Sequence record: LR756500.1
Strand: one strand, 5' to 3'
Length of the DNA: 64,000 bases
The translations under genes and the position numbers were made by a program. Position 1 is the first letter of the stretch. Each line of letters begins with the position of its first letter. Below, in pieces: positions 11,050-44,895 of the stretch. Below the pieces are notes generated by a model that saw nothing but the letters and a program-made list of their open reading frames with translations, did not search any database and had not been told where the DNA came from.

Positions 11050-11064
11050 CCACCCTACAAACTT

Positions 11065-11410: not shown

Positions 11411-11634
11411 GGCGGACCGGTTTGGGAGACCAGAAGATAAGAGATAATTCTTTATATAGAAGAAGATTGTTATTTATATTGTTGTATAGAGAATGTTTTT
11501 TATATATAGGTAGTATTTTGTAAGAGTGTATAGATGTTTGTAATTATATAGAGTGTTGTTATAAAGAAGGTTGTTTATGAGACTATAGATATTATATAGA
11601 GTGTTATGTAGTATTTGTTTGGCGGACCGGTTTG
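11411..11634 (+). repeat. 14-bp direct repeat ggcggaccggtttg (11411, 11621), each followed by a gaccaga motif
   Basis: Exact match, GC-rich in an AT-rich non-coding context. Confidence 0.85.
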
Positions 11635-11705
11635 ATTTTTGTGTACGGGACCAGATTAGAGTTGTTGGATGTATTTTGGGATATATAATAAAAAATAGAG
11701 TTTAN

Positions 11706-12197: not shown

Positions 12198-12211
12198 AAT
12201 AAAGAAGTGAN

Positions 12212-12634
12212 NNNNNNNNNNNNNNNNNNNNNNNNNNGTTTATATTAGATGAAGGAGTTTTTCAGAAGTTGAAAGACTGGGGTAGTTCATTGTTTAGAAG
12301 TACAGTTGGAAAGATGTATATAAAGTATAATAATCCTAAGAATATGATTGAGAAGAAGTTTACTAATGCTGCTGATGTTATATTAGATGGTGTAGATGAA
12401 TTTTTAAATAGTAATGGAGAGTTATTATGGGATAAGTTGTTAAAAGAGAAGAAAGAAGAGGTTAGAAATTTTATAGCTACGTATAATGCATCATCTAGAT
12501 CTCATAAGACTAATGAACAAGAGTTATATGATTTTATTAAGTATGCTCTTAATAAGAAAGAAGATGATGGAGATGATGGTAAGTCTTATAACTCATATAG
12601 TAGTAAATCATATAAAACTAAATTTAGAAGATGA
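12212..12634 (+). CDS. family-associated protein with inferred N-terminal motif and no C-terminal tag
   Basis: In-frame FILDEGVFQKLKDWG begins at 12239, nine codons after 12212 inside the 27-nt N-run; gtttatattaga matches the 13446 gene. Confidence 0.65.
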   Translation, partial: XXXXXXXXXFILDEGVFQKLKDWGSSLFRSTVGKMYIKYNNPKNMIEKKFTNAADVILDGVDEFLNSNGELLWDKLLKEKKEEVRNFIATYNASSRSHKTNEQELYDFIKYALNKKEDDGDDGKSYNSYSSKSYKTKFRR

Positions 12635-13428
12635 AATTTATATTAGAGTATAAAGTTTTTGTTAATGATAATATTTTAAGAGATAAGATTATTGATATTT
12701 TTTCCAAAGTTGGAAAAGAAAGATATAATATTAAAGATATTAAAAAGATTGTAGATAGTAAAAGTTTTAAAACATTAGATGATAAAGTAAAAGAGATATT
12801 AAATAGGTATTTTAATATTTATAATAGAGATAAAAATTTAGAATTTAAATATATTATAGAAGAATTGAATAGGTATTTTCCTAAAGCTTTAGATAGACAA
12901 ATGGATAATATAATAGATGATATAGGAGATGATATAGATGTACGTTTTTTTAATATAGAAGATGAAGAAGATATAAAATTTTTAGCTAAAGATATTGAAA
13001 AATATATTAATAATTTTTTACTATTTATTTATATCGATAATAATGATATATGGGTAGAGAGATTAAATTTATTAAAGGTTAATGATAAATTTGTAGATTA
13101 TTTTATTGATTATGTATTAGAAGAATTAGATATGAAACATATTGATAAGATTAATTCAGAAAATTATAAAGCATTAATAAAAATATTTAATATTGATAAT
13201 GGTTATATTAAATTTAAAAGTGAAGGAATATTTTATAAAAAGATTGCAGAAAATGTTTTTAGGTATATTGTAAAGAGTATTGATAAAAAATTAATTGAAA
13301 ATTTAGATGAAATTATTAAGCAAAATAATTTTATAGTTCCATATTTTAAAGATGTATTAACTCCAGAGCAGATTAAAAAGTATGATCATATTTTGAATGC
13401 AGACGACTTTGGATTTTTAGATAATTAA
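12631..13428 (+). CDS. NADDFG-tag family protein 2
   Basis: Starts MKFILEYKVFVND, ends HILNADDFGFLDN. Confidence 0.85.
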   Translation: MKFILEYKVFVNDNILRDKIIDIFSKVGKERYNIKDIKKIVDSKSFKTLDDKVKEILNRYFNIYNRDKNLEFKYIIEELNRYFPKALDRQMDNIIDDIGDDIDVRFFNIEDEEDIKFLAKDIEKYINNFLLFIYIDNNDIWVERLNLLKVNDKFVDYFIDYVLEELDMKHIDKINSENYKALIKIFNIDNGYIKFKSEGIFYKKIAENVFRYIVKSIDKKLIENLDEIIKQNNFIVPYFKDVLTPEQIKKYDHILNADDFGFLDN

Positions 13429-13445
13429 AAAAAAAAAAGAATATA

Positions 13446-14282
13446 ATGAAATATATAAAGGAGTATGAAGAGTTTATATTAGAAGCTAATGAGGCTAAAT
13501 TAGNNNNNNNNNNNNNNNNNNNNNNNNNNNNNNNNNNNNNNNNNNNNNNNNNNNNNNNNNNNNCAAGTTTAGAGTTAATTGATAATGAGTTAACTTCGTT
13601 ACCTAAAGAGATAGGAAATTTAACGAAATTAACAAGTTTATATTTAAGTAGTAATAATTTGACTTCGTTGCCTAAAGAGATAGGAAATTTAACGAAATTA
13701 ACAAGTTTATATTTAGGTGTTAATCAAAAATTAAATGAGTTGCCTAAAGAGATAGGTAATTTAACTAAATTAATAACTTTACATTTAAATGATAATAAGT
13801 TGACTGAATTGCCAAAAGAGATAGGAAATTTAACGAAATTAACAAGTTTATATTTATATAGTAATAGNNNNNNNNNNNNNNNNNNNNNNNNNGGTAATTT
13901 AACAAAATTGACAAATTTAAATTTAGGTAAAAATATGTTGAGTAAGTTGCCAAAGGAGATAGGTAATTTAACAAAATTGACAAATTTAAATTTAGGTAAA
14001 AATATGTTGACTGAATTGCCAAAAGAGATAGGAAATTTAACGAAATTAACAAGTTTATATTTAAGTAGTAATAATTTGACTTCGTTGCCTATTGAATTGA
14101 TTAAATGGAAATTTTTTGATGAATTATATTTAAGTAAATTAAGTGATGAATTATGGTTAAAATTATTTAATACAGATAAGTTTAAGGCGATAAAGCATAA
14201 AGATTTTCCAAAGAGGTTAAGAGGGAATAAAGAGGTAGAGGATATAGCGAATGCGGATGATTTTGGATTTTTCGATAATTAA
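13446..14282 (+). CDS. leucine-rich-repeat protein, NADDFG-tag family
   Basis: 23-aa repeats [23 protein letters not shown]; starts [13 protein letters not shown], ends [13 protein letters not shown]; contains two N-runs. Confidence 0.9.
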
Positions 14283-14297
14283 AAATAAATTAATAAA

Positions 14298-15077
14298 ATG
14301 AAGTACATAAAGGGATATGAAGATTTTATAACAAATAGTTTAAATGAAGCTAAAATTAAAGATGGAGAGAATGGATTAGAGTTTATAGCTAGATTAACTA
14401 AAATTACAATTGATAATTTAATTAATAGAGATATTTTAAATTTAGGTGTTTATGCATTAACTGAATTACCAAAAGAGATAGGAAATTTAACAAAATTAAC
14501 TATGCTACGTTTATATAGTAATAAGTTGACTGAGTTGCCANNNNNNNNNNNNNNNNNNNNNNNCTTAACATATTTAGATTTAACTAACAATAAGTTGACT
14601 GAGTTGCCAAAAGAGATAGAAAATTTAACTAACTTAACATATTTATCCTTAGGTAGTAATCCGTTGAAGGAATTTCCAAAGGAAATAGGAAATTTAAAGA
14701 ATTTAGAAGAATTAAATTTAAATAGAAATCAGTTGGTTGAGTTGCCAAAGGAAATAGGAAATTTAACAAAATTAACAATTTTAAATTTAGGTAGTAATAA
14801 GTTTAAGGAGTGGCCAAAGGAGATAGATAAATTAAAAAATTTAACACATTTATATTTACATGATAATGAGTTGGAATCAATACCTGATGAGTTGGTTGAG
14901 CGGAAATGGTTTTATGAGTTAGATTTAAATAGATTGAGTGATGAAGTATGGTTAAGGTTGTTTAAGATGAATGGAATTAAGGTGATAAAGCATAAAGATT
15001 TTCCAAAAAAATTAAGGAGTAGTAAAGAAATTAATGATATAGCGAATGCGGACGATTTTGGATTTTTCGATAATTAG
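14298..15077 (+). CDS. leucine-rich-repeat protein, NADDFG-tag family
   Basis: [11 protein letters not shown] repeats; starts MKYIKGYEDF, ends [13 protein letters not shown]. Confidence 0.9.
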   Translation: MKYIKGYEDFITNSLNEAKIKDGENGLEFIARLTKITIDNLINRDILNLGVYALTELPKEIGNLTKLTMLRLYSNKLTELPXXXXXXXXLTYLDLTNNKLTELPKEIENLTNLTYLSLGSNPLKEFPKEIGNLKNLEELNLNRNQLVELPKEIGNLTKLTILNLGSNKFKEWPKEIDKLKNLTHLYLHDNELESIPDELVERKWFYELDLNRLSDEVWLRLFKMNGIKVIKHKDFPKKLRSSKEINDIANADDFGFFDN

Positions 15078-17113: not shown

Positions 17114-17713
17114 ATGATTAATATTGAAAAATTAAAAGGACAAATTCCAGATATTGTTTATGATCAAATTGAATTAACTGCATCTAAATTTAATATTACC
17201 ACAAATTTAAGACTTGCACATTTTTTGGCACAGTGTTCTCACGAAAGTGGAGATTTTAGATTAGTTAAAGAAAATTTAAATTATTCTGCATCTGGTTTAT
17301 TAAAGATATTTCCAAAATATTTTACAACAGAAACTGCACCTTTATATGAAAGACAATCTCAAAAAATTGCTAATAAAGTATATGCTAATAGAATGAGTAA
17401 TGGAGATGAAAAATCTGGAGATGGATTTAAATTTTGTGGTAAAGGATATATCCAACTTACAGGTAAAGAAAATTATACAAAATTTTCTCAGTTTATTGGT
17501 GAAGATTGTGTAGCAAATTCAGATTTAGTTGCAACTAAATATCCGTTAGCTTCTGCTGCATTTTTCTTTGATAAAAATGGTTTATGGAGTATATGCGATA
17601 AAGGATCAACTATTGAAGTTGTTACATCTGTAACAAAAAGAGTTAATGGTGGAACTATTGGATTAGACGATAGAATAAATAAATTTAATAAATTTTGGAA
17701 CTTATTAAAATAA
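17114..17713 (+). CDS. GH19 (chitinase-like) endolysin
   Basis: AHFLAQCSHESG, ENLNYS, YANRMSNGD, GKGYIQLTGKENY motifs. Confidence 0.9.
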   Translation: MINIEKLKGQIPDIVYDQIELTASKFNITTNLRLAHFLAQCSHESGDFRLVKENLNYSASGLLKIFPKYFTTETAPLYERQSQKIANKVYANRMSNGDEKSGDGFKFCGKGYIQLTGKENYTKFSQFIGEDCVANSDLVATKYPLASAAFFFDKNGLWSICDKGSTIEVVTSVTKRVNGGTIGLDDRINKFNKFWNLLK

Positions 17714-18106: not shown

Positions 18107-18340
18107 TTAATCTTTATTTTCGTTGTTTCTTAATACTATTTCTGCATATTTTTCAAACACTAAATCTCCTATTTCTTTTTTATCATCTCGTGTTAATTTA
18201 TGATATAAATTATCATCTGTAAAAAATTCTATTTTTACTACAGGATCATCGTATGTTAAATCAGTTACATAATAAACTTTTTCATTAACTGACATTGAAC
18301 CATTTAATTCAATGGTTATTATTTCTTTATTTGTTTCCAT
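18107..18340 (-). CDS. hypothetical protein
   Basis: 77-aa ORF overlapping the upstream sigma gene stop. Confidence 0.65.
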   Translation of the reverse strand: METNKEIITIELNGSMSVNEKVYYVTDLTYDDPVVKIEFFTDDNLYHKLTRDDKKEIGDLVFEKYAEIVLRNNENKD

Positions 18341-18872
18341 CTATTATTAAATTATAAAATATTTTGTTATATTTAAATAAAATTTGTTTTACTATAGGTA
18401 ATGTGTAATTAAGTTCTTCAACAATCTCTTGATATTTTTTATATTCAATATATCTTTTACTTAAAATTTTTTTATCTCTTTCAGATTTAATAGAATAAAT
18501 AAAATTTGTTATTTTATTACATAATTCTTTAAATATTAAATTATTATCTGTTTTATAATCAGATTTAATATCTAAATACTCAATATCGGATAATACTTCA
18601 TATTTTCTTTTAATAGATTGTTTTTTCTTAAAATAATCGCTGCATTCATTAACTGTTATAGTACAAATCCAATTAGAAAATTTTTGATTAATATCATATG
18701 TATGTATTTTAGAAAAAACTTTAATAAAAACATTTTGAATTATTTCATTAATGTCTTCAATATTTTTAATTTTTGCTGATGCAATTTTTTTAACATAAGC
18801 ATAATATTTATCATATAATTCTTTTTGAGAATTATTATTATTATTTAATACACCTAATATTATAGATTCCAT
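18327..18872 (-). CDS. ECF-type RNA polymerase sigma factor
   Basis: Region 2 QKELYDKY...EIIQNVFIKVFSKIHTYD...FSNWICTITVNECSDY plus a C-terminal HTH (YQEIVEELN). Confidence 0.8.
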   Translation of the reverse strand: MESIILGVLNNNNNSQKELYDKYYAYVKKIASAKIKNIEDINEIIQNVFIKVFSKIHTYDINQKFSNWICTITVNECSDYFKKKQSIKRKYEVLSDIEYLDIKSDYKTDNNLIFKELCNKITNFIYSIKSERDKKILSKRYIEYKKYQEIVEELNYTLPIVKQILFKYNKIFYNLIIDGNK

Positions 18873-18928: not shown

Positions 18929-19708
18929 TTATATTTTAAAGTCTGATAATATATTATCAATATTATCTTTAGTTACATTAGTATTTTTTAAATCACTAAA
19001 CTTTTTCCTTGAAGTTATTTCATAAAAATGTTTTAGTTCATCTAATGTTTCTATAACACATACTCCCATTTCAACATCATGAAATTTAAGTTTTATGCTT
19101 ACATTAAGATATTTACCAGAATTATCTTTTAATAAATTCTTTTTAATAAAGAATTTTCTATCAGCAATACCATCCCATTCTAAATTAGTAAGACCTTCAT
19201 TAATTATTTCTTCTATTGAAATTGTTCCCATTGATAAACGATCATCAGTATTTTTATCGAAAATTAGTGATTGATCTTCTTCAAAAATTACAACTGTAAT
19301 ATCCTCGCCAATCATTTCTTTCTCTATAATAGAAGAAATTAATTTCCAATCGCCACCTGCTAAACCTGCTCCTATTAAAGGTATCCCAAATTTTTTGCCT
19401 GTAAATAATAATTTGATTTCTTTAAATGCACTTTTAATAGCATCATAATCAACATTATTTTTACCTTTAAAATGAAATTGAGTATAGGCATTAATTATTA
19501 TAGGAGTAGTATTAGTTGTATATGAAATTCCTCCTAATTTTTGTTGTGGAGTTCTTGGATCATTTTTATCAACATTAAAAGCTTCTGGAAAAATTACTTT
19601 AATTTGTTTAGCAATGCCTGCTCCCATAGTACTAAAGCAATTACAACCATGCACTATAATATCAAATTCAGTTGCTTGTCTAATTAAATTTCCGGTAATC
19701 TCTTTCAT
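18929..19708 (-). CDS. macrodomain (ADP-ribose binding/hydrolase) protein with C-terminal extension
   Basis: GNL...IVHGCNC...MGAGIAKQI and PLIGAGLAGGDW motifs. Confidence 0.85.
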   Translation of the reverse strand: MKEITGNLIRQATEFDIIVHGCNCFSTMGAGIAKQIKVIFPEAFNVDKNDPRTPQQKLGGISYTTNTTPIIINAYTQFHFKGKNNVDYDAIKSAFKEIKLLFTGKKFGIPLIGAGLAGGDWKLISSIIEKEMIGEDITVVIFEEDQSLIFDKNTDDRLSMGTISIEEIINEGLTNLEWDGIADRKFFIKKNLLKDNSGKYLNVSIKLKFHDVEMGVCVIETLDELKHFYEITSRKKFSDLKNTNVTKDNIDNILSDFKI

Positions 19709-19709: not shown

Positions 19710-20333
19710 TTATTTTACTCTACAAGCTCTTGTTGATGTAATATCCATAGGATATACTAATCTGTATGCACATCTTACTTGATCCCTAGTATAATTAGAA
19801 GAATAATAAAGTATATCATTATTCATAACTGAATATGCCATCCAATCACTTCCATCTACTTCTGTTTCATCAATAGGTTGAATTAAAGAAGCCTTTATTG
19901 ATAATTGTGTAGTGGGTTTTATAGCAGTTGATGTAGTAGTTTTAGTAGCAGTTGATGTATTAATTTTTAAACCGCCATATCCAGGAGATTGATCATCATC
20001 ATCTTCAGGCGCTGCACTAAATGTTCTAAATGATCCATTATTATTAACTGAATAACCTTCTTCTACTTCAAGTTCATCCATATATTCACGAATATCATCT
20101 TGCGTTGCCCAATAACCATCTTTTCTTAAAGCTTCTTTAATTTGAAGATTAGTGGTGCTACCATTAACTTTAATTAATTCATCAGCTTTATCTTTTACGA
20201 TTGTTTTTGTTAATTGTTTTCTCATATTATTATTTTTTTTAATTTGACAAATGCATACTTTATCCATAGTTAATCCACACTCTGGACATTTTTTTAATAA
20301 AATTGTTCTCAATATTTTATAAATTTTATTCAT
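19710..20333 (-). CDS. hypothetical protein
   Basis: Long ORF; true start may be internal (MRKQLTK). Confidence 0.7.
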   Translation of the reverse strand: MNKIYKILRTILLKKCPECGLTMDKVCICQIKKNNNMRKQLTKTIVKDKADELIKVNGSTTNLQIKEALRKDGYWATQDDIREYMDELEVEEGYSVNNNGSFRTFSAAPEDDDDQSPGYGGLKINTSTATKTTTSTAIKPTTQLSIKASLIQPIDETEVDGSDWMAYSVMNNDILYYSSNYTRDQVRCAYRLVYPMDITSTRACRVK

Positions 20334-20358: not shown

Positions 20359-20904
20359 TTAATATAAAAATGTGTTTGTATAAATTGTTTGTATTGCTTT
20401 TATTCCGTTATTGTTTATTTTTCTTGTTCCTATACCTGCAAACTTTTTAGTTAAAATAGGTTCTTTACATTCTCTGAATTCTTTAATTTCATAAACATAT
20501 TTCATCCAAATATTTTTATTTTGTTCAAAAAGATATATAGGTTTATTAACTATTGTTGCCATCGCAACAGCCCATCCAGTTCCTCCATTGACTATATTAT
20601 CTATTAATTCTCCTATTGCAAAAATAGTATCTGCATTTTTAACTTGAAACCAATTTCTCCTTAATAAATTATTTACATAAATATTATTAGAAGGATATTT
20701 TCTTTTTAAAAGTCGTGAAGCTTTTCGATAATATGAATCGGATTCCTCTAATTCTTTTTCTGTTAATATTATAAAATGTTTAGAATCAGTATTATGTGAT
20801 ATAAAAGAAAAAGCTATGGTGCTTACTCCATATTTTTCACCATAGGTTTCCCATATAGTATCAGCACCTTTAGCTCCTCCTGAATAATTAATATAATCAT
20901 TCAT
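20359..20904 (-). CDS. SLOG-like nucleotide-binding protein
   Basis: SGGAKGAD, RRNWFQV, GGTGWAV and FAGIGTR motifs. Confidence 0.55.
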   Translation of the reverse strand: MNDYINYSGGAKGADTIWETYGEKYGVSTIAFSFISHNTDSKHFIILTEKELEESDSYYRKASRLLKRKYPSNNIYVNNLLRRNWFQVKNADTIFAIGELIDNIVNGGTGWAVAMATIVNKPIYLFEQNKNIWMKYVYEIKEFRECKEPILTKKFAGIGTRKINNNGIKAIQTIYTNTFLY

Positions 20905-23387
20905 TATTGATCCTTTTTAGATTCAAGTTGTTCAACTTTTACATCAAAGAATTTAGTAATTGTTTTTTCAAGTGGAGTTCCTTTTACTGTTTCTAATAAA
21001 CCTTCTATTCCACCTTTTTGAAATATTCCATGTAAACCACCGCCTTGAGCTTTAAGATTTTCAGCTAATATTTTATTATTTTCTAAATTACCTATTGATA
21101 CTAAAGCATCTATTAATCCAGGTTGAATTGATTGATTTTTAGCAGTAACTTCTTTAATTGATAAATCAGTAAATTTAGAAGCTAAATAAAGTTTTTGTTC
21201 ATCATCGGCTTTTCTTCTTGATAATTGAGTAGCATGTATTGAATCATGTTTAGCTTGTTGTTCAATTTCATAATTTAAATCAACTAATTTAGTATTAGCT
21301 TTTTCTGCACTTCTTTTTAAATTAATTTCTGCAACTAATTTTTGAGTTTCATCTACTTCATTCATTTCGTTTCTTTTTAATTTTTCATAATTAACAACGA
21401 AATTAAGATCTCTTTCTTTTTGTTTAATTTTTAAATTATTCTCTACTGCATCGTGTTGAGAAGTTTCTAATAAATTAGCTATATCTTTATCACCAATTGT
21501 AACATTAAGTACTTCAACATCGTAAATTCTCATTCCATTTTCATCGAATACTTTTCCTACTCTGCCTTTTTCTTTTTCAGATACACCTAGAATAATATCT
21601 CTAATCATATCTGTTGAGTTATCGTTAAAGTATTCAATAGTTTGTTTTTTAACGGCATTTCTAATTACAGATCTTAAATGTTGCGTTAAAAGTTTAACAT
21701 AATTAGAAACATTAAACCATTTTTCAGATTTACCTTCAAAATTAACTCTATAAGATAATCTAATATTAACATTTACAAAATCTTTTGTAATTGCTTCAAC
21801 AATATCTGAAACAATATTATTTTCTGTTTGAAGATAAACAGTTTCAAATAATAAATGATCTGTTTTTGGTTTATTAGTAGATAAAGCTAAACTTTCTAAA
21901 GTTTCATCATATTCTAACATTACAACTTTAGGTCCAACTATTACTTCTCTTTCACCAGTCTTTTTAACCTTTTGAATAGCAAATCCTGGCCATACATTAA
22001 GAGTTACAGCTCCATCATATTTATCATTAATTTCAACAGTACGAGGTTTTGTAAACTCATTATTTCGTTGCATTTTTTCACCTACTAAACCTTGAAATGA
22101 TCCTCTGCTTTTTAATCTTCTATCATAATTTGCAAATTGTTCTTCCTCAATAGCAAAATCAGCAGATGCACTAAATAGCATATCACCCATTACTGAAGCA
22201 TCTCTAAGTTCATTTGATTTCTTTCTTAGTTCTCTATTGTAATTTAATGCTTCTGTATTACTTGGAAACCATAAATTAACTTGTTTATCAGAAAGAATTC
22301 GTTTAACGATAACTTCTGATCTAGGATCCGGAAGAAGCATTTTATTTCCTTTAACTAATTTAATGCTTCCATCATTTTTATCTAAAATGTATCTTCCTGA
22401 ACCTTCAGGAACAGCTACTGCATAATGAATTTCTCTATCACCGTATTTTATTAATGATAATTCAGGTCTTGGAAAAAATATTCTTTGTTCTTTTCCAGTA
22501 ATAAATAATTCTTCACCGGCTATTCTTTGTTTACCATCTTTACCTTCTTCTTGATAATCTTGAATAACTTTAACATAAATACCCATGTTATCATTAAGTT
22601 CAACTGCTTTGAAAATTCTATTGCCTTTTTCATCAATAAAAGTTTCAGTAGGTTTTGGAAATACTACAGCTGGACCTCTTTCATATCTTTTATCTCCATT
22701 TTGATCTAAAAGAATGCAATATTCCAATCTTTCTAATGTTACAGCATTTCTTGCATAACTGCCTCTTTCATCTTTTAATACTTCAATACCAGTAGGAGGT
22801 ATATAAAATGAAACATCAGTTCCTTTAATTAAAAGAATATTTCCAGTAAACAATTCTTCTTCCTTTATAACATTAGGTTTCTTTGTCTTTTTAGAATCAT
22901 TATCATCTTTAACATCCGCTGCTTTCAATACAGTATTTTTGATATTAGCTTTTGCAGCTACTTCATTATATACTCTTACTAAAAGATATTCATTCCATTT
23001 AAGTTGATGACCTTGTACTTCTTCTGCAATTTGACCTGGCCATAATGCAAATGTTGTAGGGCCAGGTATATTGATTTTATTACCAATATCTAATTTAACA
23101 CCTTCTTGTTTTCCTTTTGATGGATGAGAATTGTTTTCTGTCTCTGGATTTTCAAGAATAATGTATTGTCCTTCAGTTGCAACTACCCAAGTTTGAATAG
23201 ATGATTGTACTTGTACAGCCATAAACTGTCTCGTTCTTTTATCATAGATAACAGGTTTATCTGTATCCCCTGGACTAATTTTAAAAGGCCCATTTACTAT
23301 TTGAACAGTTCCTGAAGAACCATCTTGAATATAAGCGTATGTTCCTTGTGATAAAACTAAATCTCCTAATCGCTGAATTTCTGCCAT
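20904..23387 (-). CDS. major vault protein-like protein
   Basis: Repeated beta units with GP..F/L.P..E motifs, an MVP-like shoulder (TKDFVNVNIRLSYRVNF...LRSVIRNAV...NSTDMIRDIILG...GMRIYDVEVLNV) and a long C-terminal coiled coil. Confidence 0.75.
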   Translation of the reverse strand: MAEIQRLGDLVLSQGTYAYIQDGSSGTVQIVNGPFKISPGDTDKPVIYDKRTRQFMAVQVQSSIQTWVVATEGQYIILENPETENNSHPSKGKQEGVKLDIGNKINIPGPTTFALWPGQIAEEVQGHQLKWNEYLLVRVYNEVAAKANIKNTVLKAADVKDDNDSKKTKKPNVIKEEELFTGNILLIKGTDVSFYIPPTGIEVLKDERGSYARNAVTLERLEYCILLDQNGDKRYERGPAVVFPKPTETFIDEKGNRIFKAVELNDNMGIYVKVIQDYQEEGKDGKQRIAGEELFITGKEQRIFFPRPELSLIKYGDREIHYAVAVPEGSGRYILDKNDGSIKLVKGNKMLLPDPRSEVIVKRILSDKQVNLWFPSNTEALNYNRELRKKSNELRDASVMGDMLFSASADFAIEEEQFANYDRRLKSRGSFQGLVGEKMQRNNEFTKPRTVEINDKYDGAVTLNVWPGFAIQKVKKTGEREVIVGPKVVMLEYDETLESLALSTNKPKTDHLLFETVYLQTENNIVSDIVEAITKDFVNVNIRLSYRVNFEGKSEKWFNVSNYVKLLTQHLRSVIRNAVKKQTIEYFNDNSTDMIRDIILGVSEKEKGRVGKVFDENGMRIYDVEVLNVTIGDKDIANLLETSQHDAVENNLKIKQKERDLNFVVNYEKLKRNEMNEVDETQKLVAEINLKRSAEKANTKLVDLNYEIEQQAKHDSIHATQLSRRKADDEQKLYLASKFTDLSIKEVTAKNQSIQPGLIDALVSIGNLENNKILAENLKAQGGGLHGIFQKGGIEGLLETVKGTPLEKTITKFFDVKVEQLESKKDQ

Positions 23388-23410: not shown

Positions 23411-24064
23411 TTATTTGTTAATTGTTGTTAAAATATTTTTTATATTTAATGCTATATCTTCTTTACCACTTAATGCTTTAACATTTTTATTTTTATCTAT
23501 TAAATATGCAACATGTATATTTTCATCTTTCATTTCTTTTTTATCATTAGCTATTACATAATCACACTTATTTTTTTCTAATGATTCTGTTGCAATATTA
23601 ATTAATTCAAAATAATTTAATCCAACTTCAAATTTAAAACCAATAAGTATAACATCTTTATTCCATTCTTTATTCCATTCTTTAATATATGAAATTATTT
23701 TAGGATTATATTTTATTCTTTCTGCTAAAGATTGTATAAATGCTTCTTTATCGGTACTTTTTAATTTAGTAGTAATAGGTTCAAATCCAAAATCGCTAAC
23801 AGTCATTGTATGTATAACTACATCTACTAAAGGAATTAACTCCTCCATTATTTTCTTTAACGAATCAACATTTGTAATTTCATATATATTTTGTATATTT
23901 GATGGTATAACACTACCTCTAGCATAAACATAAAAAATATTATGACCAGCTCTATGTAATTCTTCTGCTATTATTGATCCTAATTTTCCAGATGATATAT
24001 TAGTTAATACTCTAACATCATCTATGTATTCACGTGTACCTCCAGCTGTAATTAAAACTCTCAT
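23411..24064 (-). CDS. coaB: phosphopantothenate-cysteine ligase (stand-alone CoaB)
   Basis: VLITAGGTREYIDDVRVLTNISSGKLG, VSDF, LIGFKFE and YVIAND motifs; ATG at 24064. Confidence 0.85.
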   Translation of the reverse strand: MRVLITAGGTREYIDDVRVLTNISSGKLGSIIAEELHRAGHNIFYVYARGSVIPSNIQNIYEITNVDSLKKIMEELIPLVDVVIHTMTVSDFGFEPITTKLKSTDKEAFIQSLAERIKYNPKIISYIKEWNKEWNKDVILIGFKFEVGLNYFELINIATESLEKNKCDYVIANDKKEMKDENIHVAYLIDKNKNVKALSGKEDIALNIKNILTTINK

Positions 24065-24110
24065 ATAATGTGACAATTAATTTTTTAATTGCGTATACGG
24101 TATAATAAAT

Positions 24111-24500: not shown

Positions 24501-25607
24501 TTAAAAATTATTTGTAATATAAGTTACATTATGAGCTTCAATATGTTTAGGTATATCAATACCTCTAAAAAGTTTGTTAATTACTTTTTCAGGGACCATT
24601 TCTTCTCTAGATAAATTTTGATCTAAAACTTTATTGAATGTAGTATTAATATAAATGATATTAATATAAGCATTATATAATGTAAATAAAGATATTAAAC
24701 TTTCTCGTGTTAATTTAGAAGTATTTGTTGCATTCCATATAAATGATTTACCTTCTCTTAAATATCCTTTAGCAATTTCTTTAGCTGCTTGTATTACATG
24801 ACCTTGTGGCTTATCAGGCTTTATTTTTAATTTAATTCTTATTTCATCTAAACTTATAACAGGTATATCTTTTAAATGAGTTTTAATATAAGTATCTTTA
24901 CCACTTCCAGGTAAGCCACTCATTAAATAAACTTTAGATTTAGTATCATTAAATGCTTCATCTGTATGATAATAAGTTTTTTTAACAATATAATTAAATT
25001 TAGTATATTCATTTTTAAATTGATATGAATTATAATAACATCCTAATTCTTCTGCATATAATCCAAACCAATTAATCTTTTCAATCATACTTTCAGTATC
25101 TGATGCAATTCTTCCCAAAGTATCATATATAGCAAGTTTATGTAATAAAAACAAATTACAATCTAAACTCATTTTAATTATATCATACTCTTGATCTTTA
25201 TTTGTTTTATCTATAATCCAAGGTGGTTCACCGTGATAAAGAATAAGATTTGCTATTTGTAATTTATCTTCAAATGTTATTATATTCTTCTGTTCAATTT
25301 TATCTAAAAGTTCTAGCGCAATATGATAACCTATTCTACTATGTCCGTGACTTCTAATATGTCCATTTTCTTCTTTACTACAATATGGTTTTCCGATATC
25401 ATGTAAAGTTATTGCATATCTTAATATTTTTTGTTGTTGTTCTGTAAATAATATAGATTCTTTTTCAAATTCATCTAAAACCATTCTGACATGCGTTAAT
25501 ACATCACCCTCCGCATGATATTCTTTATCTTGTTCGCAATGTTTCATATCATGAAAGTATGGTATAATTTCAGGTAATATTTTTTGTATATAAGTTAAAA
25601 AATCCAT
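24501..25607 (-). CDS. HD-domain plus P-loop kinase (polynucleotide kinase-like, RNA end healing)
   Basis: YHAEGDVLTH...LHDIGK and GLPGSGKDT...SLDEIR...WNATN. Confidence 0.85.
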   Translation of the reverse strand: MDFLTYIQKILPEIIPYFHDMKHCEQDKEYHAEGDVLTHVRMVLDEFEKESILFTEQQQKILRYAITLHDIGKPYCSKEENGHIRSHGHSRIGYHIALELLDKIEQKNIITFEDKLQIANLILYHGEPPWIIDKTNKDQEYDIIKMSLDCNLFLLHKLAIYDTLGRIASDTESMIEKINWFGLYAEELGCYYNSYQFKNEYTKFNYIVKKTYYHTDEAFNDTKSKVYLMSGLPGSGKDTYIKTHLKDIPVISLDEIRIKLKIKPDKPQGHVIQAAKEIAKGYLREGKSFIWNATNTSKLTRESLISLFTLYNAYINIIYINTTFNKVLDQNLSREEMVPEKVINKLFRGIDIPKHIEAHNVTYITNNF

Positions 25608-25609
25608 TT

Positions 25610-26704
25610 TTATTTTTTCATTTCATTATATAAAGTTGCTCTTTTCCAGTTTTTTGTCCAATGTTCATCTGTTTGGACATGACCTTTTCTAACCCATTTA
25701 AATATAGAATTATAAAACATATCATTTGGAAATTCATCAGCAATTCTTGTTACTATTCCTTCTTTAGGAGATATAAAAAATTCTGAATCACTTAATGTAG
25801 AATATGTTGAAACTAATTCTTCTATTTTATTATAAATAAAAGTTTCATTTACATTAAAATTTTTATCGCTTTTAAATAAAACAGGTACAGTTGGTAAATC
25901 TAACATATTTGCATAAAATTCAACTTCTTCCCATGATAACCAAAAGTCTCTACTCATATCTCTTATACCAAAAACATAAAAATGACTATCTAATTTAGAA
26001 TATTCTATGCTATGAATTCCATACATATTTTCACCACATATTTCTAATTCTCCTAAGTCATGTCTAATCATATTCCATAATGGAGATAACCAACTATCCC
26101 ATCCATTTTGTGATGGTGATATTCTTGATCTACCAAATACTCCAAAACGAGAAATACTTGTATTAGAACCATCTAATTTTTCAGTCATAATAATTTCACC
26201 TTTGCATACTTTATTTATATTTTTAGCAATTCTATCATCACTTGTTGTTCCTGGCGAATTTAAAACATGATATGTTCTTGGATATTTTTCAACAATCATA
26301 TTTCTATCTTTTTCAAATAAATGTAAAACATTTCCTTGCTTTAACATTTTCTGAACATTTTCTTGATTAAAATGATAACCTTTTAATCGTTTACCATTTT
26401 TTAAAATTGGATTACCCCATTTATCATAATCTTTAACAAACTCATTTAATGATAAATTATGAGGATATATTTGTATTAAATTTGCCTTTTCTCTTAATTC
26501 TGAAGTTGATATAATTGTTGTTTCAGCATCTATATGATGTTTAGCGCATAATGATACACCATTATTTAAATAATATCCACCATCTAAAAATAAATTTCTA
26601 TCTATTATATGATGTGCATCGATTGTAGGTTCATTACATATAACGCATTTATAATTATCTCGTTTAAATACTTGAGTCTTAAATTCTTCTCTACTTAATA
26701 ACAT
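25610..26704 (-). CDS. HNH domain fused to an RNA ligase
   Basis: RDNYKCVIC...DAHHI...LCAKHH then KYPRTYH...EKLDGSN...CGENM...KEGIV...KWVR. Confidence 0.85.
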   Translation of the reverse strand: MLLSREEFKTQVFKRDNYKCVICNEPTIDAHHIIDRNLFLDGGYYLNNGVSLCAKHHIDAETTIISTSELREKANLIQIYPHNLSLNEFVKDYDKWGNPILKNGKRLKGYHFNQENVQKMLKQGNVLHLFEKDRNMIVEKYPRTYHVLNSPGTTSDDRIAKNINKVCKGEIIMTEKLDGSNTSISRFGVFGRSRISPSQNGWDSWLSPLWNMIRHDLGELEICGENMYGIHSIEYSKLDSHFYVFGIRDMSRDFWLSWEEVEFYANMLDLPTVPVLFKSDKNFNVNETFIYNKIEELVSTYSTLSDSEFFISPKEGIVTRIADEFPNDMFYNSIFKWVRKGHVQTDEHWTKNWKRATLYNEMKK

Positions 26705-26706: not shown

Positions 26707-28191
26707 TTATCTATGGATTTTTTCACATGCGTCATTACCATCTATAAGATCTATTTCATCATCATTCCTTTTAAATCCTATACTTGTACTTACATTGTTA
26801 TTCATTTTATGACTCATTTTGGTATGTTTCTTTATTTTTTCAATAGTATCAATTTCAGCAACAATTTCACTCATTAACCACTTTTCATTCAAAACTATTT
26901 TTAAAGAATCCAATTTCATTTTTAACATATTTATACTATTATAAATATGAGCTCCGGTAACTTTTGATTCAAAATATTTATTAATTATTTTATCATTTAC
27001 AAATATTTTTGTAGTATCTTCTTTATCAATATTAAAATTATATTTAAGAGATTTTAATATAATATTTTTAATATTATCTTTAGTAATCGAATCGAATAAT
27101 AAAACTTTATCAAATCTTCCAGGTCTCTGAGCAGCTAAATCTAAAAAGCTTGCAGAGTTAGTTGCACATAAAAATCCTACTCCTTTACTTATCTTATTAG
27201 TTCCATCTAAAATATCTAAAAATAAACCTAATTTTTCAGAATAAGATCCATTATCTCTAGATCCTAAACTTAAATCAATATCATCTGATATTATAATTGA
27301 AGGCTTTAATATCTCAGCAAGTTCAACCTTTTCTTTAAAAAATTTATCAATAGAAGTTTTAATAATTGTAACTCCTAATTTATTTAATTCATTTGATAAT
27401 ACTAATGTTGATTCAGTTTTACCAGTACCTGGATTACCTACCATTAAATATCTTAAAAAGACTTCTTTTTCTTTAAATATATCATAAAATAACGATACAT
27501 TATCCATAATATCTTTTGGTAAATAAATATCATCAAAACTTCTTTCTTCTAATTTATTAATCTTCCAATCAAATTTATTATTAGACATTTCAATAAATTT
27601 ACCTTTAATATCACTTTCTTGTAAAGCAAGTTCAAATAAATTTGAATAAATGCGTTCATCAATAAAATTAGTAACTTCTCTACTATACATTCGTATTAAA
27701 TATACCATTTCACCAGAATCTATAAATTTATCAAATGCTAATAATAAGGTTAAATCTTTATGTTTAAATGTAATGTGCGTAGGATTGTTAAGACTTTCGC
27801 CTAATGTCACATTATTTTGAAATCTACCATTAAACATAAATGAAATATCATTAATATCATAAAGAGTTTGTTTGTCTTTATTTTGATATATAATATTAAA
27901 AAAATCTGAAAATATTTTAAATACTGGATATGAAAATCTTTGTCCAAAATCAAAATATGTTTTATAACTCAATGTATTAATTCCATCTCCACGTTCTTGA
28001 CCACTATTAAAGGCATTACTTCCAATATCTGTTACAGTTTTTACTATTTCTTTAGATACTTTTTCCATATTTTTTTCATTTATTATTAAATAATATTTTT
28101 CATTTACTTTTCTTTTACTATAAATTTCAGAAGCAGCTTTATTTAATCGAGTAATAAAATCTCCATAAGCACTATTTTTATCAAGATTCAT
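26707..28191 (-). CDS. AAA+ ATPase
   Basis: GNPGTGKT Walker A, ISDDID Walker B, RPGRFD arginine finger. Confidence 0.85.
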   Translation of the reverse strand: MNLDKNSAYGDFITRLNKAASEIYSKRKVNEKYYLIINEKNMEKVSKEIVKTVTDIGSNAFNSGQERGDGINTLSYKTYFDFGQRFSYPVFKIFSDFFNIIYQNKDKQTLYDINDISFMFNGRFQNNVTLGESLNNPTHITFKHKDLTLLLAFDKFIDSGEMVYLIRMYSREVTNFIDERIYSNLFELALQESDIKGKFIEMSNNKFDWKINKLEERSFDDIYLPKDIMDNVSLFYDIFKEKEVFLRYLMVGNPGTGKTESTLVLSNELNKLGVTIIKTSIDKFFKEKVELAEILKPSIIISDDIDLSLGSRDNGSYSEKLGLFLDILDGTNKISKGVGFLCATNSASFLDLAAQRPGRFDKVLLFDSITKDNIKNIILKSLKYNFNIDKEDTTKIFVNDKIINKYFESKVTGAHIYNSINMLKMKLDSLKIVLNEKWLMSEIVAEIDTIEKIKKHTKMSHKMNNNVSTSIGFKRNDDEIDLIDGNDACEKIHR

Positions 28192-28193: not shown

Positions 28194-29090
28194 TTATATA
28201 ATGTTATATTCATTCCATTCTTCTTCAGCAGCTTTAGATACTTTATCAACTATTATATTTAAATCATTTCCATATAAACCTGCGCCTGAAAATGAACCTA
28301 CTTCTAATAAACCGAATTCTCCATTCATTTCAGTAACATCTAAAGTCCATACATGTTCTGGATTAAATAATTTAGCACATTTATTAGCAAAATTATAAGC
28401 TTTATCATTAGTACATAATTCATTAATTGAATGTGAACCCATTAATATGTAATCTTTAGTCGTTGTACCTGGAATAATTGTTTCAGGATATGACCAATCT
28501 CTGTATAAACTTCCTGATATAACTTCCTGATTAACAACAACAAATCTCCATTCTTTATGCAAAGCTTTCACATCAGAAACTATTACTAATAAATCAGGGT
28601 TTATATCATAAAATCCACAAAGTTTTATTCCTTCTTCATAATTATTATATGATAGAACTGTGCCTGTAAAATCCTTTAATCCTGAATTAGGTCTAATAAA
28701 AATATGACCGCTATGACCACTTTTATTATATAAATTATAAAGATAATCTTTTCTTCTAATAAGATCACCAAATGGTAACATAGTATAATTTTTATGTACT
28801 AATAAATCTCCAAATATAGGATAGTATGAAGTACAATTATATTTGGTTTCATCTAAATAAACCCCTGGTATCCATTTAACATATCGTTTAATTTTTATAC
28901 CTAAATTCAATGAACCATAAAACACTACACAATCATCATCATTAAATAATTTAGAAATATAACTTAAATCATTTTCAAAAGGAATATATTCAATTAACTT
29001 ATATTCAATTTGTTTTTTCTTTAATACTTTTATTAAATAAGGTTCAGTATCAGTAAATAGATTCTTTTCAATTAACCATTTAGTTTTCAT
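28194..29090 (-). CDS. ATP-grasp domain protein (DUF4343/R2K-like)
   Basis: FIRPNSGLKDFTG, EWRFVV, TLDV...LLEVGSFSGAGLY. Confidence 0.75.
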   Translation of the reverse strand: MKTKWLIEKNLFTDTEPYLIKVLKKKQIEYKLIEYIPFENDLSYISKLFNDDDCVVFYGSLNLGIKIKRYVKWIPGVYLDETKYNCTSYYPIFGDLLVHKNYTMLPFGDLIRRKDYLYNLYNKSGHSGHIFIRPNSGLKDFTGTVLSYNNYEEGIKLCGFYDINPDLLVIVSDVKALHKEWRFVVVNQEVISGSLYRDWSYPETIIPGTTTKDYILMGSHSINELCTNDKAYNFANKCAKLFNPEHVWTLDVTEMNGEFGLLEVGSFSGAGLYGNDLNIIVDKVSKAAEEEWNEYNII

Positions 29091-29354: not shown

Positions 29355-29597
29355 TTAACTAATTAAAAAATTATAACACTTTTCTAAAACTTTTTCTTTA
29401 TCTTCAGTATATTCAGCTTCCCATACAACTAAAACTTTATAATTTTGTCTTTTTAAAAATTTAATTCTTAATTCTTCATGTAACCATATATCTTTAACTT
29501 TAGTCCATCCTCCTATTTTATCGTCAGGTTTATTTTTTAAAGGATTAGCATGCCAAAAATCTCCGTTAAATTCAATTACTTTATTATTACTAAACAT
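29355..29597 (-). CDS. C-terminal fragment of a Vsr-like/PD-(D/E)XK homing endonuclease
   Basis: VIEFNGDFWHANP...YKVLVVWE; lacks the upstream catalytic D strand. Confidence 0.65.
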   Translation of the reverse strand: MFSNNKVIEFNGDFWHANPLKNKPDDKIGGWTKVKDIWLHEELRIKFLKRQNYKVLVVWEAEYTEDKEKVLEKCYNFLIS

Positions 29598-30871
29598 TAA
29601 CTTATTTCAACTAAATATTTTATTGTACATTTTTCTGGTTCATATATTGTAAATTCATCATTTATAAGATCTGCTCCTCCATGTGCATATACTGAATCAT
29701 ATTTATTGTCATCAAGCATTTTTTTACTGAGTTTATATGCATCAGAATTATGTTTTGTCCAATGCCATTGTTTTCCTACATTAACAGCATAAATCGCCAA
29801 AAATCCTGAATCATCATTGCCTTTAGCCCAATAAGAACCTCTAAATGATGAATAACCAGCAGATTTTTTAGCTTTATTTGCAAAATAGACTGCATCGCCC
29901 CACATGGACCCCGAATATATTGAATTTTTCGGTCTAATTAATAAACCTTTTTGAAGTATAAAATACCAATTTTGATTTCTAGAACCGTGCCAAAATAATT
30001 CTTCTCTTTTAGGAACATTATCATATTTAGAAGTATGATTTTCATATTTATTTTGGGTCTCAATATTAACTACTTTATAAGCTTTTTTGAAATTATTTTT
30101 CATATCACCTAAAGCCTTTTTAATCTGTTCATTTTCATCTGCATTAGTTTCTTCTATTAATAATCCTAATTCTTCAAGAATAGTAACATCTTTATAATCT
30201 TCATGTTTTTCTTGAGCAACTTGTATTGCTTTCTTTTTCTTAGTATTAGCTAATACTTGACCAGCCATAGTATCTAATGTATCTTGTTCACTAGATATTT
30301 TTTTGCTAGCTTCTTCTAATTCTTTTTGATTTGTAATAGCAGTAAACAAATGATATTGAACTTTATTCATTTGTCTTGGAATTATTGTAAAAAGCTTTAA
30401 TAACTTTTTATTTAATTCTTTATGATCAACATTAATTTTTAATGAGCCTGATATATCATTAATAACTTCTTGAGCTTCATCAACCATTGCTTGTGTTACT
30501 GCTTCTGAAGTAACAGTATATTTTTCTTGCACAACAACGTTTGCATACTGTTGTAATCTACTAAAAATTTTATTAATAATTGGATTATCAATTTCTTTTC
30601 TTACTATTTTTTTAGTAACAGTAGTTTCTAATCCATTGCCTTCAATAGTTTCTTTATGAAGATGAGTTACATCCTGATAACCTTTTTTAGTTTTTGATCT
30701 ATAAATAGAATCCCATTCACTAATAGAATAACTTTTAGATACACTCGTTTTTTGAACACGTCCATATTCAACATGCATTGTTCCATCTCCATGGTCATAA
30801 AGATCATAAAATTTATTATTGTTCAGTTCCGAAACCATGATTAATTTAATAACTTTAGTGTAATTACTCAT
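29597..30871 (-). CDS. PARP-type ADP-ribosyltransferase (WGR, helical and catalytic domains)
   Basis: NNKFYDL...EYGRV (WGR-like), KLFTIIPR helical domain, FWHGS, VYFA and NDEFTIY (H-Y-E triad). Confidence 0.9.
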   Translation of the reverse strand: MSNYTKVIKLIMVSELNNNKFYDLYDHGDGTMHVEYGRVQKTSVSKSYSISEWDSIYRSKTKKGYQDVTHLHKETIEGNGLETTVTKKIVRKEIDNPIINKIFSRLQQYANVVVQEKYTVTSEAVTQAMVDEAQEVINDISGSLKINVDHKELNKKLLKLFTIIPRQMNKVQYHLFTAITNQKELEEASKKISSEQDTLDTMAGQVLANTKKKKAIQVAQEKHEDYKDVTILEELGLLIEETNADENEQIKKALGDMKNNFKKAYKVVNIETQNKYENHTSKYDNVPKREELFWHGSRNQNWYFILQKGLLIRPKNSIYSGSMWGDAVYFANKAKKSAGYSSFRGSYWAKGNDDSGFLAIYAVNVGKQWHWTKHNSDAYKLSKKMLDDNKYDSVYAHGGADLINDEFTIYEPEKCTIKYLVEIS

Positions 30872-44891: not shown

Positions 44892-44895
44892 ATTT

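What the first reader, a model, noticed from the sequence alone, without database searches (positions are those of the whole stretch)
20904..23387. Major-vault-protein-like gene in a phage
Seen: an 827-aa protein with tandem beta-repeats (PGP, GPAVVFPKPTE, GNKMLLPDPRSE, GPKVVMLEYDE), an SPFH-like shoulder whose motif order parallels MVP, and a long coiled coil. Established: MVP self-assembles into the eukaryotic vault, which carries PARP4 and TEP1/vault RNA, and homologues exist in some bacteria. Inference: the phage may build a vault-like cage or membrane-associated assembly during infection, perhaps shielding phage RNA or enzymes. It sits in the same - strand block as a PARP, RNA-repair enzymes and a macrodomain.
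Basis: partly seen in the sequence, partly recalled or inferred. Interest (0 to 1): 0.85.

Follow-up and report, generated by a model that had tools for sequence, protein, structure and literature searches.

The report
Major vault protein in huge phage
A 462-kb uncultivated groundwater phage really does encode a full-length relative of the major vault protein, the shell subunit of eukaryotic vault particles. Such genes turn out to be common in large uncultivated phages, stand alone, and are not tied to the neighbouring PARP gene.

Summary
ORF 20904-23387 (-) encodes an 827-aa soluble protein that is a genuine full-length major vault protein (MVP) homologue. Pfam MVP_shoulder scores E 4.5e-27 and Vault_3 passes its cut-off. 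The only solved structures hit by sequence are MVPs. An AlphaFold2 model (pLDDT 82) matches whole vault chains at E 1e-32, against about 1e-6 for plain SPFH proteins.

The window is the start of LR756500.1, a 462-kb uncultured phage. The family is large: 574 clusters at E<1e-30, 216 IMG/VR viral contigs and 507 bacterial species genomes. Viral sequences form several deep clades.

PARP lies within 10 kb of MVP in 1 of 83 other loci. It occurs in 7/43 MVP-positive records against 14/39 MVP-negative large-phage records. It is PARP1/2-like, with no PARP4 domains. The genome has no TROVE, no DUF4062 and no vault-like or Y-like RNA.

The most likely function is a self-assembling vault-like shell, possibly nucleotide-binding, since the keyhole-loop motif S-x-G-K/R-P-K is conserved from human to phage. 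Assembly is untested; the multimer prediction gave no answer. Phage MVPs were already described in a 2023 preprint, so this is a new member of a known kind.

Side lead: in three other phage MVP clades the gene sits beside a Ro60/TROVE-fold gene.

The parts
20904..23387 (-). Phage major vault protein homologue, 827 aa (P0001). About nine beta repeats span 1-520, with a low-complexity insert at 157-181 and a disordered loop at 408-445. The SPFH-type shoulder is 521-633, the cap helix 634-751 and a conserved helical C-terminus 752-827. The keyhole-loop motif S503-T-N-K506-P507-K508 is present.
20359..20904 (-). 181-aa SLOG-fold protein (DprA/YpsA-like, P0271). Its ATG overlaps the MVP stop codon by one base (TAATG), so the two are probably translationally coupled. 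A 44%-identical homologue lies about 3.8 kb from the MVP gene in LR756501. Related Atlas clusters are fused to NADAR or DUF4326.
23411..24076 (-). CoaB-like phosphopantothenate-cysteine ligase, immediately upstream of MVP across a 23-bp gap. It shares the transcription direction; no functional link is shown.
29597..30871 (-). PARP1/2-like poly(ADP-ribose) polymerase, 424 aa. It has a weak WGR-like N-terminus and a catalytic domain at 245-423 with H-Y-E. It lies in the same strand block, but comparative data do not support it as a partner of MVP.
18929..19708 (-). DarG-like macrodomain protein (ADP-ribosyl glycohydrolase family), in the same strand block.
24501..26704 (-). RNA-repair pair: an HD phosphohydrolase + P-loop kinase (24501-25607) and an RNA ligase (25610-26704). 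Homologues of the HD-kinase recur near MVP in 7 of 65 dereplicated viral loci.

Best explanation
The gene encodes a genuine, phage-maintained member of the prokaryotic/viral branch of the major vault protein family.

Shown:
- Full-length collinearity with eukaryotic MVP: about nine N-terminal beta repeats, an SPFH-type shoulder, a long cap helix and a conserved C-terminus.
- No membrane segment.
- No obligatory partner gene across phages.
- Membership of a clade that is almost wholly viral.

Inferred:
- Like eukaryotic MVP, which alone suffices to build vault shells (established knowledge), the protein self-assembles side by side through repeats, shoulder and cap helix. The product would be a hollow vault-like or half-vault shell in the cytoplasm of the infected host, probably a Bacteroidota cell.

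More speculative:
- The shell binds nucleotides (NAD+, ADP-ribose or ADP) at the inter-subunit shoulder pocket. The loop that forms this pocket in human MVP (S501-A-G-R504-P-K506) is one of the best conserved stretches of the phage family (S503 and K508 invariant, G505 and P507 at 90% or more).
- The gene also sits in an island of NAD+/ADP-ribose and RNA-repair counter-defence genes and is translationally coupled to a SLOG nucleotide-binding protein.
- The shell would then serve the phage as a compartment or sponge during the conflict with host NAD+/ADP-ribose-based or RNA-targeting defences.

The confidence value refers to 'true MVP that forms a vault-like homo-oligomeric shell'. Identity alone is about 0.95, and the nucleotide or counter-defence role about 0.2.
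For: - Identity: Pfam MVP_shoulder E 4.5e-27 and Vault_3 over its cut-off. Only MVPs are hit in PDB by sequence. The AF2 model has pLDDT 82. Foldseek's top 12 hits are whole vault chains at E 1e-32 to 1e-26, against about 1e-6 for SPFH rings.
- Solubility: the maximum Kyte-Doolittle 19-residue mean is 0.94.
- Family size and purifying conservation: 574 50%-identity clusters at E<1e-30, 216 viral contigs and 40 invariant columns over 73 sequences at 36-56% identity.
- Stand-alone gene: the commonest neighbour family occurs in only 11 of 65 dereplicated viral loci and is a homing endonuclease.
- Viral lineage: the window protein sits in a 29-row clade (support 100) holding 25 viral rows and 3 short MAG contigs. 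Cellular bacterial MVPs form one separate 64-row clade.
- Keyhole loop: the alignment to human MVP is, the ligand residues come from PMC12280208, and the conservation profile ranks LSTNKPK 9th of all stretches.
- Context: SLOG coupling; DarG-like macro, PARP, ARH, NAMPT and NMNAT-Nudix in the window; SLOG and NADAR near MVP in LR756501.
Against: - No assembly evidence: the trimer prediction of residues 462-780 scored 0.01 ('no answer').
- No particle has ever been shown for any bacterial or phage MVP (preprints 10.1101/872010 and 10.1101/2023.11.10.566534).
- The cap helix is shorter than in rat or human MVP (118 against about 155 residues), so the geometry may differ.
- Half of the human NAD+-pocket residues are not kept: R507->T, P508->D, R511->L, W545->V, P565->S, K573->Q.
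- NAD/ADP-ribose genes near MVP are occasional across phages: NADAR in 5/65 dereplicated groups, NadE in 3/65, PARP in one other locus. Such islands are common in large phages anyway.
- No expression data: only DNA runs hold the sequence.
Confidence: 0.55

Rival explanations
1. The MVP shell specifically houses the phage PARP, and perhaps RNA and RNA-repair enzymes encoded in the same strand block.
For: - PARP, RNA ligase, HD-kinase and macrodomain genes lie within 2-8 kb on the same strand.
- Human vaults hold PARP4 and bind NAD+/ADP-ribose in the shoulder (PMC12280208; 10.64898/2026.05.01.722283).
Against: - PARP is within 10 kb of MVP in 1 of 83 other loci.
- PARP is present in 7/43 MVP-positive records against 14/39 MVP-negative large phage records, odds ratio 0.35.
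- LR756501 has MVP but no PARP.
- The PARP's best PDB matches are PARP1/2 catalytic domains, and it has no MINT, vWA, VIT or BRCT region.
- There is no TROVE, DUF4062 or DUF7788 gene in this genome and no Rfam RNA at 15-33 kb.
Confidence: 0.07
2. It acts as an SPFH-type membrane scaffold like flotillin, HflK/C or QmcA, organising or inhibiting host membrane proteins, rather than as a free cytoplasmic shell.
For: - The shoulder is an SPFH domain (Band_7 E 5e-6).
- SPFH rings appear among the Foldseek hits.
- SPFH proteins are frequent in phages and giant viruses.
- In locus L045 a second SPFH protein follows MVP.
Against: - There is no hydrophobic anchor.
- 520 residues of vault repeats precede the shoulder.
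- Full-length matches to vault chains are 25 orders of magnitude better than to SPFH rings.
Confidence: 0.08
3. It is a virion or assembly component, such as an internal capsid protein, a scaffold or a decoy shell of the huge phage, rather than an intracellular compartment.
For: - The gene is kept in many large phages with big capsids.
- The 2023 preprint raises this idea.
Against: - The gene lies among early or auxiliary-type genes (CoA, NAD, RNA repair, a sigma factor), not structural genes.
- Close homologues are chromosomal in Myxococcota, Cytophagales and other bacteria with no phage context.
- PHROGs holds no family for it.
Confidence: 0.1
4. It is a recently captured host gene (an auxiliary metabolic gene, for instance amino-acid storage as proposed for bacterial MVPs) with no phage-specific role.
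For: - Bacteroidota such as Cytophagales and Saprospiraceae have cellular MVPs.
- The preprint 10.1101/2023.11.10.566534 favours an auxiliary-metabolic-gene reading.
Against: - The window protein is 42-46% identical to cellular MVPs but 51-57% identical to other viral ones.
- Its 29-row clade is viral apart from 3 short MAG contigs, and viral clades are deeper than the cellular clade.
- G+C is 0.26-0.28 against about 0.24 around it, so it is not foreign.
Confidence: 0.05

Closest known systems
Eukaryotic major vault protein (rat 4V60, human 9BW5/9MXV)
   Same: - Domain order and length: 827 against 861-893 aa.
- Vault repeats, SPFH shoulder and cap helix, collinear in sequence (479-654 against 477-668).
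- Foldseek E 1e-32 over the whole chain.
- Conserved S-x-G-[KR]-P-K keyhole loop.
   Different: - Only 16-18% structural-alignment identity.
- Shorter cap helix (118 aa) and a different C-terminus.
- Half of the NAD+-pocket residues are changed.
- No PARP4, TEP1 or vault RNA counterparts in this genome.
- No evidence yet of a particle.
Phage MVPs of gut Caudoviricetes ctOa11 and ct2Ri15 (Santos et al., bioRxiv 10.1101/2023.11.10.566534)
   Same: - Same kind of thing: a full-length MVP homologue in a tailed phage, closest to bacterial homologues, lying outside the structural gene cluster.
- Function unknown, and no vPARP or TEP1 reported there.
   Different: - Those are two gut phages linked to Bacillota. 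This is a 462-kb groundwater phage of the lineage that includes the 735-kb genome.
- The present survey shows at least 216 viral contigs and several deep viral clades, far beyond two cases.
Bacterial MVP homologues (Myxococcota, Cytophagales/Saprospiraceae, Cyanobacteria; Sokolskyi, bioRxiv 10.1101/872010)
   Same: One sequence family at 42-46% identity over the full length, with the same domains.
   Different: Cellular sequences form their own clade that follows taxonomy; the window protein belongs to a viral clade. Neither group has been studied experimentally.
SPFH ring and cage proteins (HflK/C, QmcA, flotillin, prohibitin, stomatin)
   Same: Shoulder domain fold and a following long helix.
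   Different: Those proteins have membrane anchors and lack the 520-residue vault-repeat arm. Matches cover about 300 columns at E about 1e-6.

Membership tests
Major vault protein (MVP) family | MVP shoulder domain (Pfam PF11978) over the gathering score | tested here: met
   94.8 bits against a cut-off of 25, E 4.5e-27, profile positions 2-118 of 118. Also found in the whole-genome search at 100.5 bits.
Major vault protein (MVP) family | N-terminal array of vault beta repeats (R1-R9) | tested here: met
   Vault_3 PF17795 scores 29.8 bits against a 28.8 cut-off at residues 476-513. The AF2 model shows serial small beta domains at 10-365 and 446-520. Foldseek hits the murine R1-R7 crystal structures at E about 1e-14 and whole chains over 820-940 columns. 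The exact repeat count (about nine) was read from the DSSP string, not from a superposition.
Major vault protein (MVP) family | Long cap helix after the shoulder | tested here: met
   A single helix at 634-751 in the model. It is shorter than in rat or human MVP, and its pLDDT falls from 85 to 57 along the helix.
Major vault protein (MVP) family | Self-assembly into a closed multi-subunit shell (39-fold half vaults in eukaryotes) | tested here: inconclusive
   A complex prediction with three copies of residues 462-780 scored 0.01 and 0.00, verdict 'no answer'. This needs expression and EM.
Major vault protein (MVP) family | Nucleotide (NAD+/ADP-ribose/ADP) pocket at the shoulder keyhole loop | tested here: inconclusive
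   Kept or conservatively changed: R504->K506, P505->P507, K506->K508, H509->H511. Changed: R507->T, P508->D, R511->L, W545->V, P565->S, K573->Q. S503 and K508 are invariant in 73 family members.
Eukaryote-type vault ribonucleoprotein (MVP + PARP4 + TEP1 + vault RNA) | A PARP with an MVP-interacting (MINT) region that co-occurs with MVP | tested here: not met
   The PARP is 424 aa and PARP1/2-like, with nothing after the catalytic domain. Co-occurrence is 7/43 MVP-positive against 14/39 MVP-negative records.
Eukaryote-type vault ribonucleoprotein (MVP + PARP4 + TEP1 + vault RNA) | TROVE-domain (TEP1/Ro-like) RNA-binding subunit and a small RNA | tested here: not met
   The window's genome has no TROVE, DUF7788 or DUF4062 match. 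Rfam finds only five tRNAs in the window and nothing at 15-33 kb at E<=0.1. The feature is met in some other MVP phages (see Noticed in passing).
Plain SPFH / Band 7 family (flotillin, HflK/C, stomatin) | SPFH domain with a membrane anchor and no vault repeats | tested here: not met
   There is no hydrophobic segment, 520 residues of repeats precede the SPFH domain, and Band_7 is only the third-ranked Pfam hit.

The most novel reading that the evidence does not exclude
Large phages, not cells, may be the main reservoir of MVP diversity. In this reading MVP belongs to an old phage toolkit for RNA-damage and NAD+/ADP-ribose conflicts.

In three separate viral MVP clades the gene lies within 0.1-5 kb of a Ro60/TROVE-fold gene. 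In one complete 102-kb phage Y-RNA-like elements sit between the two. In this window MVP lies with a PARP, a macrodomain, a SLOG protein and RNA-repair enzymes.

The eukaryotic vault, which combines MVP, the TROVE protein TEP1, a small RNA and PARP4, would then descend from, or parallel, a phage or bacterial conflict module. A phage system could finally make vault function testable.
Probability: 0.12. Interest if true: 0.85.

Novelty: new member of a known kind. Interest (0 to 1): 0.55.

Why it matters
The function of vaults has been an open question since 1986, and no prokaryotic or viral MVP has been studied at the bench. A phage MVP is a single, soluble gene product that should be easy to express.

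If it forms shells, it gives a minimal system for asking what vault shells do. It would also be a new self-assembling cage for engineering. It bears as well on whether the NAD+/ADP-ribose pocket recently found in human vaults is ancestral.

The existence of phage MVPs is not new, however. It was reported in a 2023 preprint, and JGI already labels relatives 'major vault protein'. The attractive MVP-PARP link in this window does not survive comparison with other phages.

Tried and rejected
1. Multimer test. Complex prediction with three copies of residues 462-780 and alignment A2 scored 0.01/0.00 and returned 'no answer'. It is not evidence either way.
2. PHROGs and NCBIfam hold no family for the protein.
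3. The search for related loci with the single protein, or with single rIIA, found nothing. Alignments were needed.
4. Conserved operon. tblastn of every window ORF against 83 MVP loci, and all-against-all clustering of 2,966 neighbour ORFs, found no universal partner in phages or bacteria. The top 'bacterial neighbour' is an antisense shadow ORF over MVP in high-G+C genomes.
5. Genome-level association of MVP with PARP, or with TROVE-like genes, against an rIIA-selected control set of 41 large phage records. PARP is not enriched, and if anything depleted. TROVE-like genes occur in 17/43 against 12/39 records, not significant. Records are related to one another, so the p-values are only indicative.
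6. The promoter/terminator scan was no better than shuffles in this 24% G+C DNA.
7. Expression. Only DNA runs (groundwater and soil metagenomes) hold the gene and there is no RNA run.
9. The MVP tree could not be rooted with eukaryotic sequences, because no tool returned a eukaryotic MVP as a usable protein id. The tree is midpoint-rooted FastTree only.
10. The DUF2828 protein has no PDB match by sequence. The fold search was needed.
Full report
**1. What is there**

The window is 24% G+C. It is densely packed with - strand ORFs and carries five tRNA genes. It is 100% identical to the first 64 kb of LR756500.1, an 'uncultured phage' genome of 462,018 bp. An IMG/VR version of 429 kb is rated 96% complete. 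Runs holding the sequence are groundwater metagenomes. rIIA and rIIB genes at 52987-56374 confirm the phage nature.

**2. Identity of the protein**

- Pfam gives MVP_shoulder (E 4.5e-27, whole profile), Vault_3 (just over its cut-off) and a weaker Band_7.
- Against all PDB sequences, only major vault proteins are hit, collinearly.
- An AlphaFold2 model built on a 73-sequence alignment has mean pLDDT 82.
- It shows serial beta repeats (10-365), a helix plus a disordered loop (366-445) and a further repeat (446-520).
- These are followed by an alpha/beta shoulder (521-633), one 118-residue helix (634-751) and a small helical C-terminus.
- Foldseek ranks twelve whole vault chains first (E 1.4e-32 to 8e-26, 820-940 columns), then the murine R1-R7 crystals (about 1e-14). 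SPFH rings follow at about 1e-6 over about 300 columns.
- There is no hydrophobic segment.

This is an MVP.

**3. How common it is**

The exhaustive profile-free search finds 1,108 50%-identity clusters, 574 of them at E<1e-30, nearly all full-length. The word-indexed search finds more than 3,700 sequences. Several are on contigs of 130-531 kb, and some are already named 'major vault protein' by JGI.

IMG/VR holds at least 216 viral contigs with a relative. Many are 100-500 kb, and several are complete with terminal repeats. In GTDB, 507 of about 185,000 species genomes have one. These are mainly Myxococcota (Nannocystis, Polyangiaceae), Cytophagales, Saprospiraceae, Sericytochromatia, Riflebacteria and Vulcanimicrobiota.

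By contrast, among 50,697 GenBank phage records only LR756500 and the 735-kb LR756501/LR756503 carry it. BFVD has no phage counterpart. Its best hit is an 802-aa Harvfovirus protein.

A FastTree of 164 sequences puts the window protein in a 29-row clade (support 100). That clade holds 25 viral rows and 3 short MAG contigs, with LR756501 basal. Cellular bacterial MVPs form one 64-row clade that follows taxonomy and sits among several deeper viral clades. Three caveats apply: each set is the best 80 hits, the root is a midpoint, and there is no eukaryotic outgroup.

**4. Surroundings in the window**

All of these genes lie on the - strand.

| Coordinates | Gene |
|---|---|
| 29597-30871 | PARP |
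| 28194-29090 | ATP-grasp |
| 26707-28191 | AAA ATPase |
| 25610-26704 | RNA ligase |
| 24501-25607 | HD + kinase |
| 23411-24076 | CoaB-like ligase |
| 20904-23387 | MVP |
| 20359-20904 | 181-aa SLOG-fold protein |
| 19710-20333 | unknown, 207 aa |
| 18929-19708 | DarG-like macrodomain |
| 18327-18872 | sigma factor |

The ATG of the SLOG-fold protein overlaps the MVP stop codon (TAATG).

Further along the same strand are:
- CoaD at 34850-36010;
- an ADP-ribosylglycohydrolase at 43415-44215;
- NAMPT at 44896-46083;
- an NMNAT-Nudix protein at 47604-48515.

The region is thus an island of NAD+/ADP-ribose, CoA and RNA-repair genes. No Rfam RNA other than tRNAs is present.

**5. Is the PARP a partner?**

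The evidence says no.
- The PARP's best structural relatives by sequence are PARP1/2 catalytic domains. The H, Y and E motifs are present and the N-terminus is weakly WGR-like. Nothing resembles PARP4's vWA, VIT or MINT regions.
- Of 83 other MVP loci with 10-kb flanks, one (L051) has a PARP relative.
- Whole-record searches find PARP in 5 of 40 MVP-positive phage records, and in 1 of 18 that are at least 90% complete. It is absent from LR756501.
- In a control set of 41 large phage records chosen by rIIA, MVP is present in 2 and PARP in 15. Pooled, PARP occurs in 7/43 MVP-positive against 14/39 MVP-negative records (odds ratio 0.35).
- The genome also lacks TROVE, DUF7788 and DUF4062.

Clustering all 2,966 neighbour ORFs shows no universal partner at all. 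This fits a protein that works by itself.

**6. Mechanism**

It is established that eukaryotic MVP alone assembles vault shells. The phage protein keeps every structural module used for that, so a vault-like homo-oligomeric shell is the best-supported reading. It is inferred, not shown: the only multimer job gave no answer.

The strongest conservation is in repeats R4-R7 and R9/shoulder. The stretch L-S-T-N-K-P-K (502-508) aligns with human S501-A-G-R504-P-K506. This is the 'keyhole loop' that holds NAD+, ADP or ADP-ribose between adjacent subunits (PMC12280208 and 10.64898/2026.05.01.722283). S503 and K508 are invariant in 73 sequences. Other pocket residues are not kept, so ligand binding is possible but unproven.

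Two further observations suggest a nucleotide-linked role in counter-defence:
- the translational coupling to a SLOG protein, whose relatives are fused to NADAR;
- the presence of SLOG and NADAR near MVP in LR756501.

I rate this role at about 0.2.

**7. Side lead from related loci**

In a 17-row viral clade, MVP is flanked on the same strand by several recurring genes:
- a 511-aa DUF2828+DUF7788 protein, in 12 loci, as close as 116 bp;
- RlaP;
- metallophosphoesterases;
- NADAR;
- an HD-kinase.

The DUF2828 protein's AF2 model (pLDDT 70) hits only Ro60/TROVE structures in its top 13 matches.

In the complete 102-kb phage behind L045, a canonical Ro60 (TROVE + vWA_Ro60) ends 1.6 kb upstream of MVP. 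Two RNA matches lie between them: a Y-RNA/sbRNA-type match over its gathering score and a sub-threshold YrlA match. An SPFH protein follows MVP. In L020, which belongs to the window's own MVP clade, a TROVE protein lies 4.4 kb downstream.

At genome level, however, TROVE-like genes are not significantly enriched in MVP-positive records: 17/43 against 12/39. The adjacency is suggestive only.

**8. Novelty and score**

- Bacterial MVP homologues have been known in silico since 2013-2019.
- Phage MVPs were described in silico in 2023 for two gut phages, with no PARP or TEP1 found.
- Vault-like proteins are mentioned for Borgs.
- The huge-phage paper that released this genome mentions neither vault nor PARP.

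The finding is therefore a new member of a known kind. What this work adds is the breadth and depth of the viral clades, the negative result on PARP, the keyhole-loop conservation and the MVP-TROVE adjacency lead.

I set interest at 0.55. The object is real and experimentally attractive, but its existence is not new and its function remains inferred.

Noticed in passing
L078:8350-9885 (+), with homologues in L068, L070, L072-L077, L079 and L084: A 511-aa DUF2828+DUF7788 protein lies 0.1-5 kb from MVP on the same strand in a whole clade of 100-200-kb phages. RlaP, metallophosphoesterases, NADAR and an HD-kinase accompany it. Its AF2 model matches only Ro60/TROVE structures in the top 13 PDB hits, so DUF2828/DUF7788 appears to be a divergent TROVE + vWA protein.
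   Followed up: yes
L045:6604-14486: A complete 102-kb phage carries these features in a row on one strand: a canonical Ro60 (TROVE + vWA_Ro60, 6604-8328), a Y-RNA/sbRNA-type Rfam hit (8468-8540, 40.2 bits, over the gathering score), a sub-threshold YrlA hit (8890-8954), a phosphoesterase, MVP (9923-12493) and a 599-aa SPFH protein (12687-14486). L020 has a TROVE protein 4.4 kb downstream of its MVP.
   Followed up: partly
window 43415-48515 (-): NAD+ salvage and ADP-ribose cluster: an ADP-ribosylglycohydrolase (43415-44215), NAMPT (44896-46083), a metallophosphoesterase (46564-47124) and an NMNAT-like cytidylyltransferase + Nudix protein (47604-48515). It resembles the phage NAD+ reconstitution pathways used against NAD+-depleting defences.
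   Followed up: partly
window 23411-24076, 34850-36010 and 61508-62227 (-): Coenzyme A pathway genes in a phage: a CoaB-like ligase directly upstream of MVP, CoaD (over the NCBIfam cut-off) with an extra C-terminal region of about 230 aa, and a protein homologous to a CoaE-annotated gene of L002.
   Followed up: partly
window 38866-41179 (-): A PhoH-like ATPase ORF (38866-39939) has weak intein-splicing/HINT matches at its N-terminus and overlaps the 430-aa ORF at 39887-41179. This may be an intein-containing or split PhoH gene.
   Followed up: no
window 13446-15077 (+): Two adjacent leucine-rich-repeat proteins (278 and 259 aa), on the strand opposite to the main block, are unusual for a phage. 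A class I chitinase-like/lysozyme-like protein lies at 17114-17713.
   Followed up: no
L095, L096, L105, L138, L147, L159 (genome contigs): MVP genes assigned to MAGs of Candidatus Saccharimonadota, Magasanikiibacteriota, Promethearchaeota, Methanosarcinales and a Cytophagales bin fall inside viral MVP clades in the tree. These contigs (4-330 kb) are probably mis-binned large phages.
   Followed up: partly
L020:600-4500 and 13542; L078:5348-8310; L070, L072, L074, L077: MVP genes in several large phages lie within a few kb of phage tRNA arrays (about 20 tRNAs in L020). L077 also has a RAGATH-33 RNA at 2218-2330. In the window the tRNA array (61.4-62.8 kb) is 38 kb away.
   Followed up: no
BFVD A0A3G5A4K1 (Harvfovirus sp.): An 802-aa giant-virus 'prohibitin domain-containing protein' aligns with the phage MVP model over 864 columns (E 2.8e-12). 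It may be an MVP-like protein of a eukaryotic giant virus.
   Followed up: no
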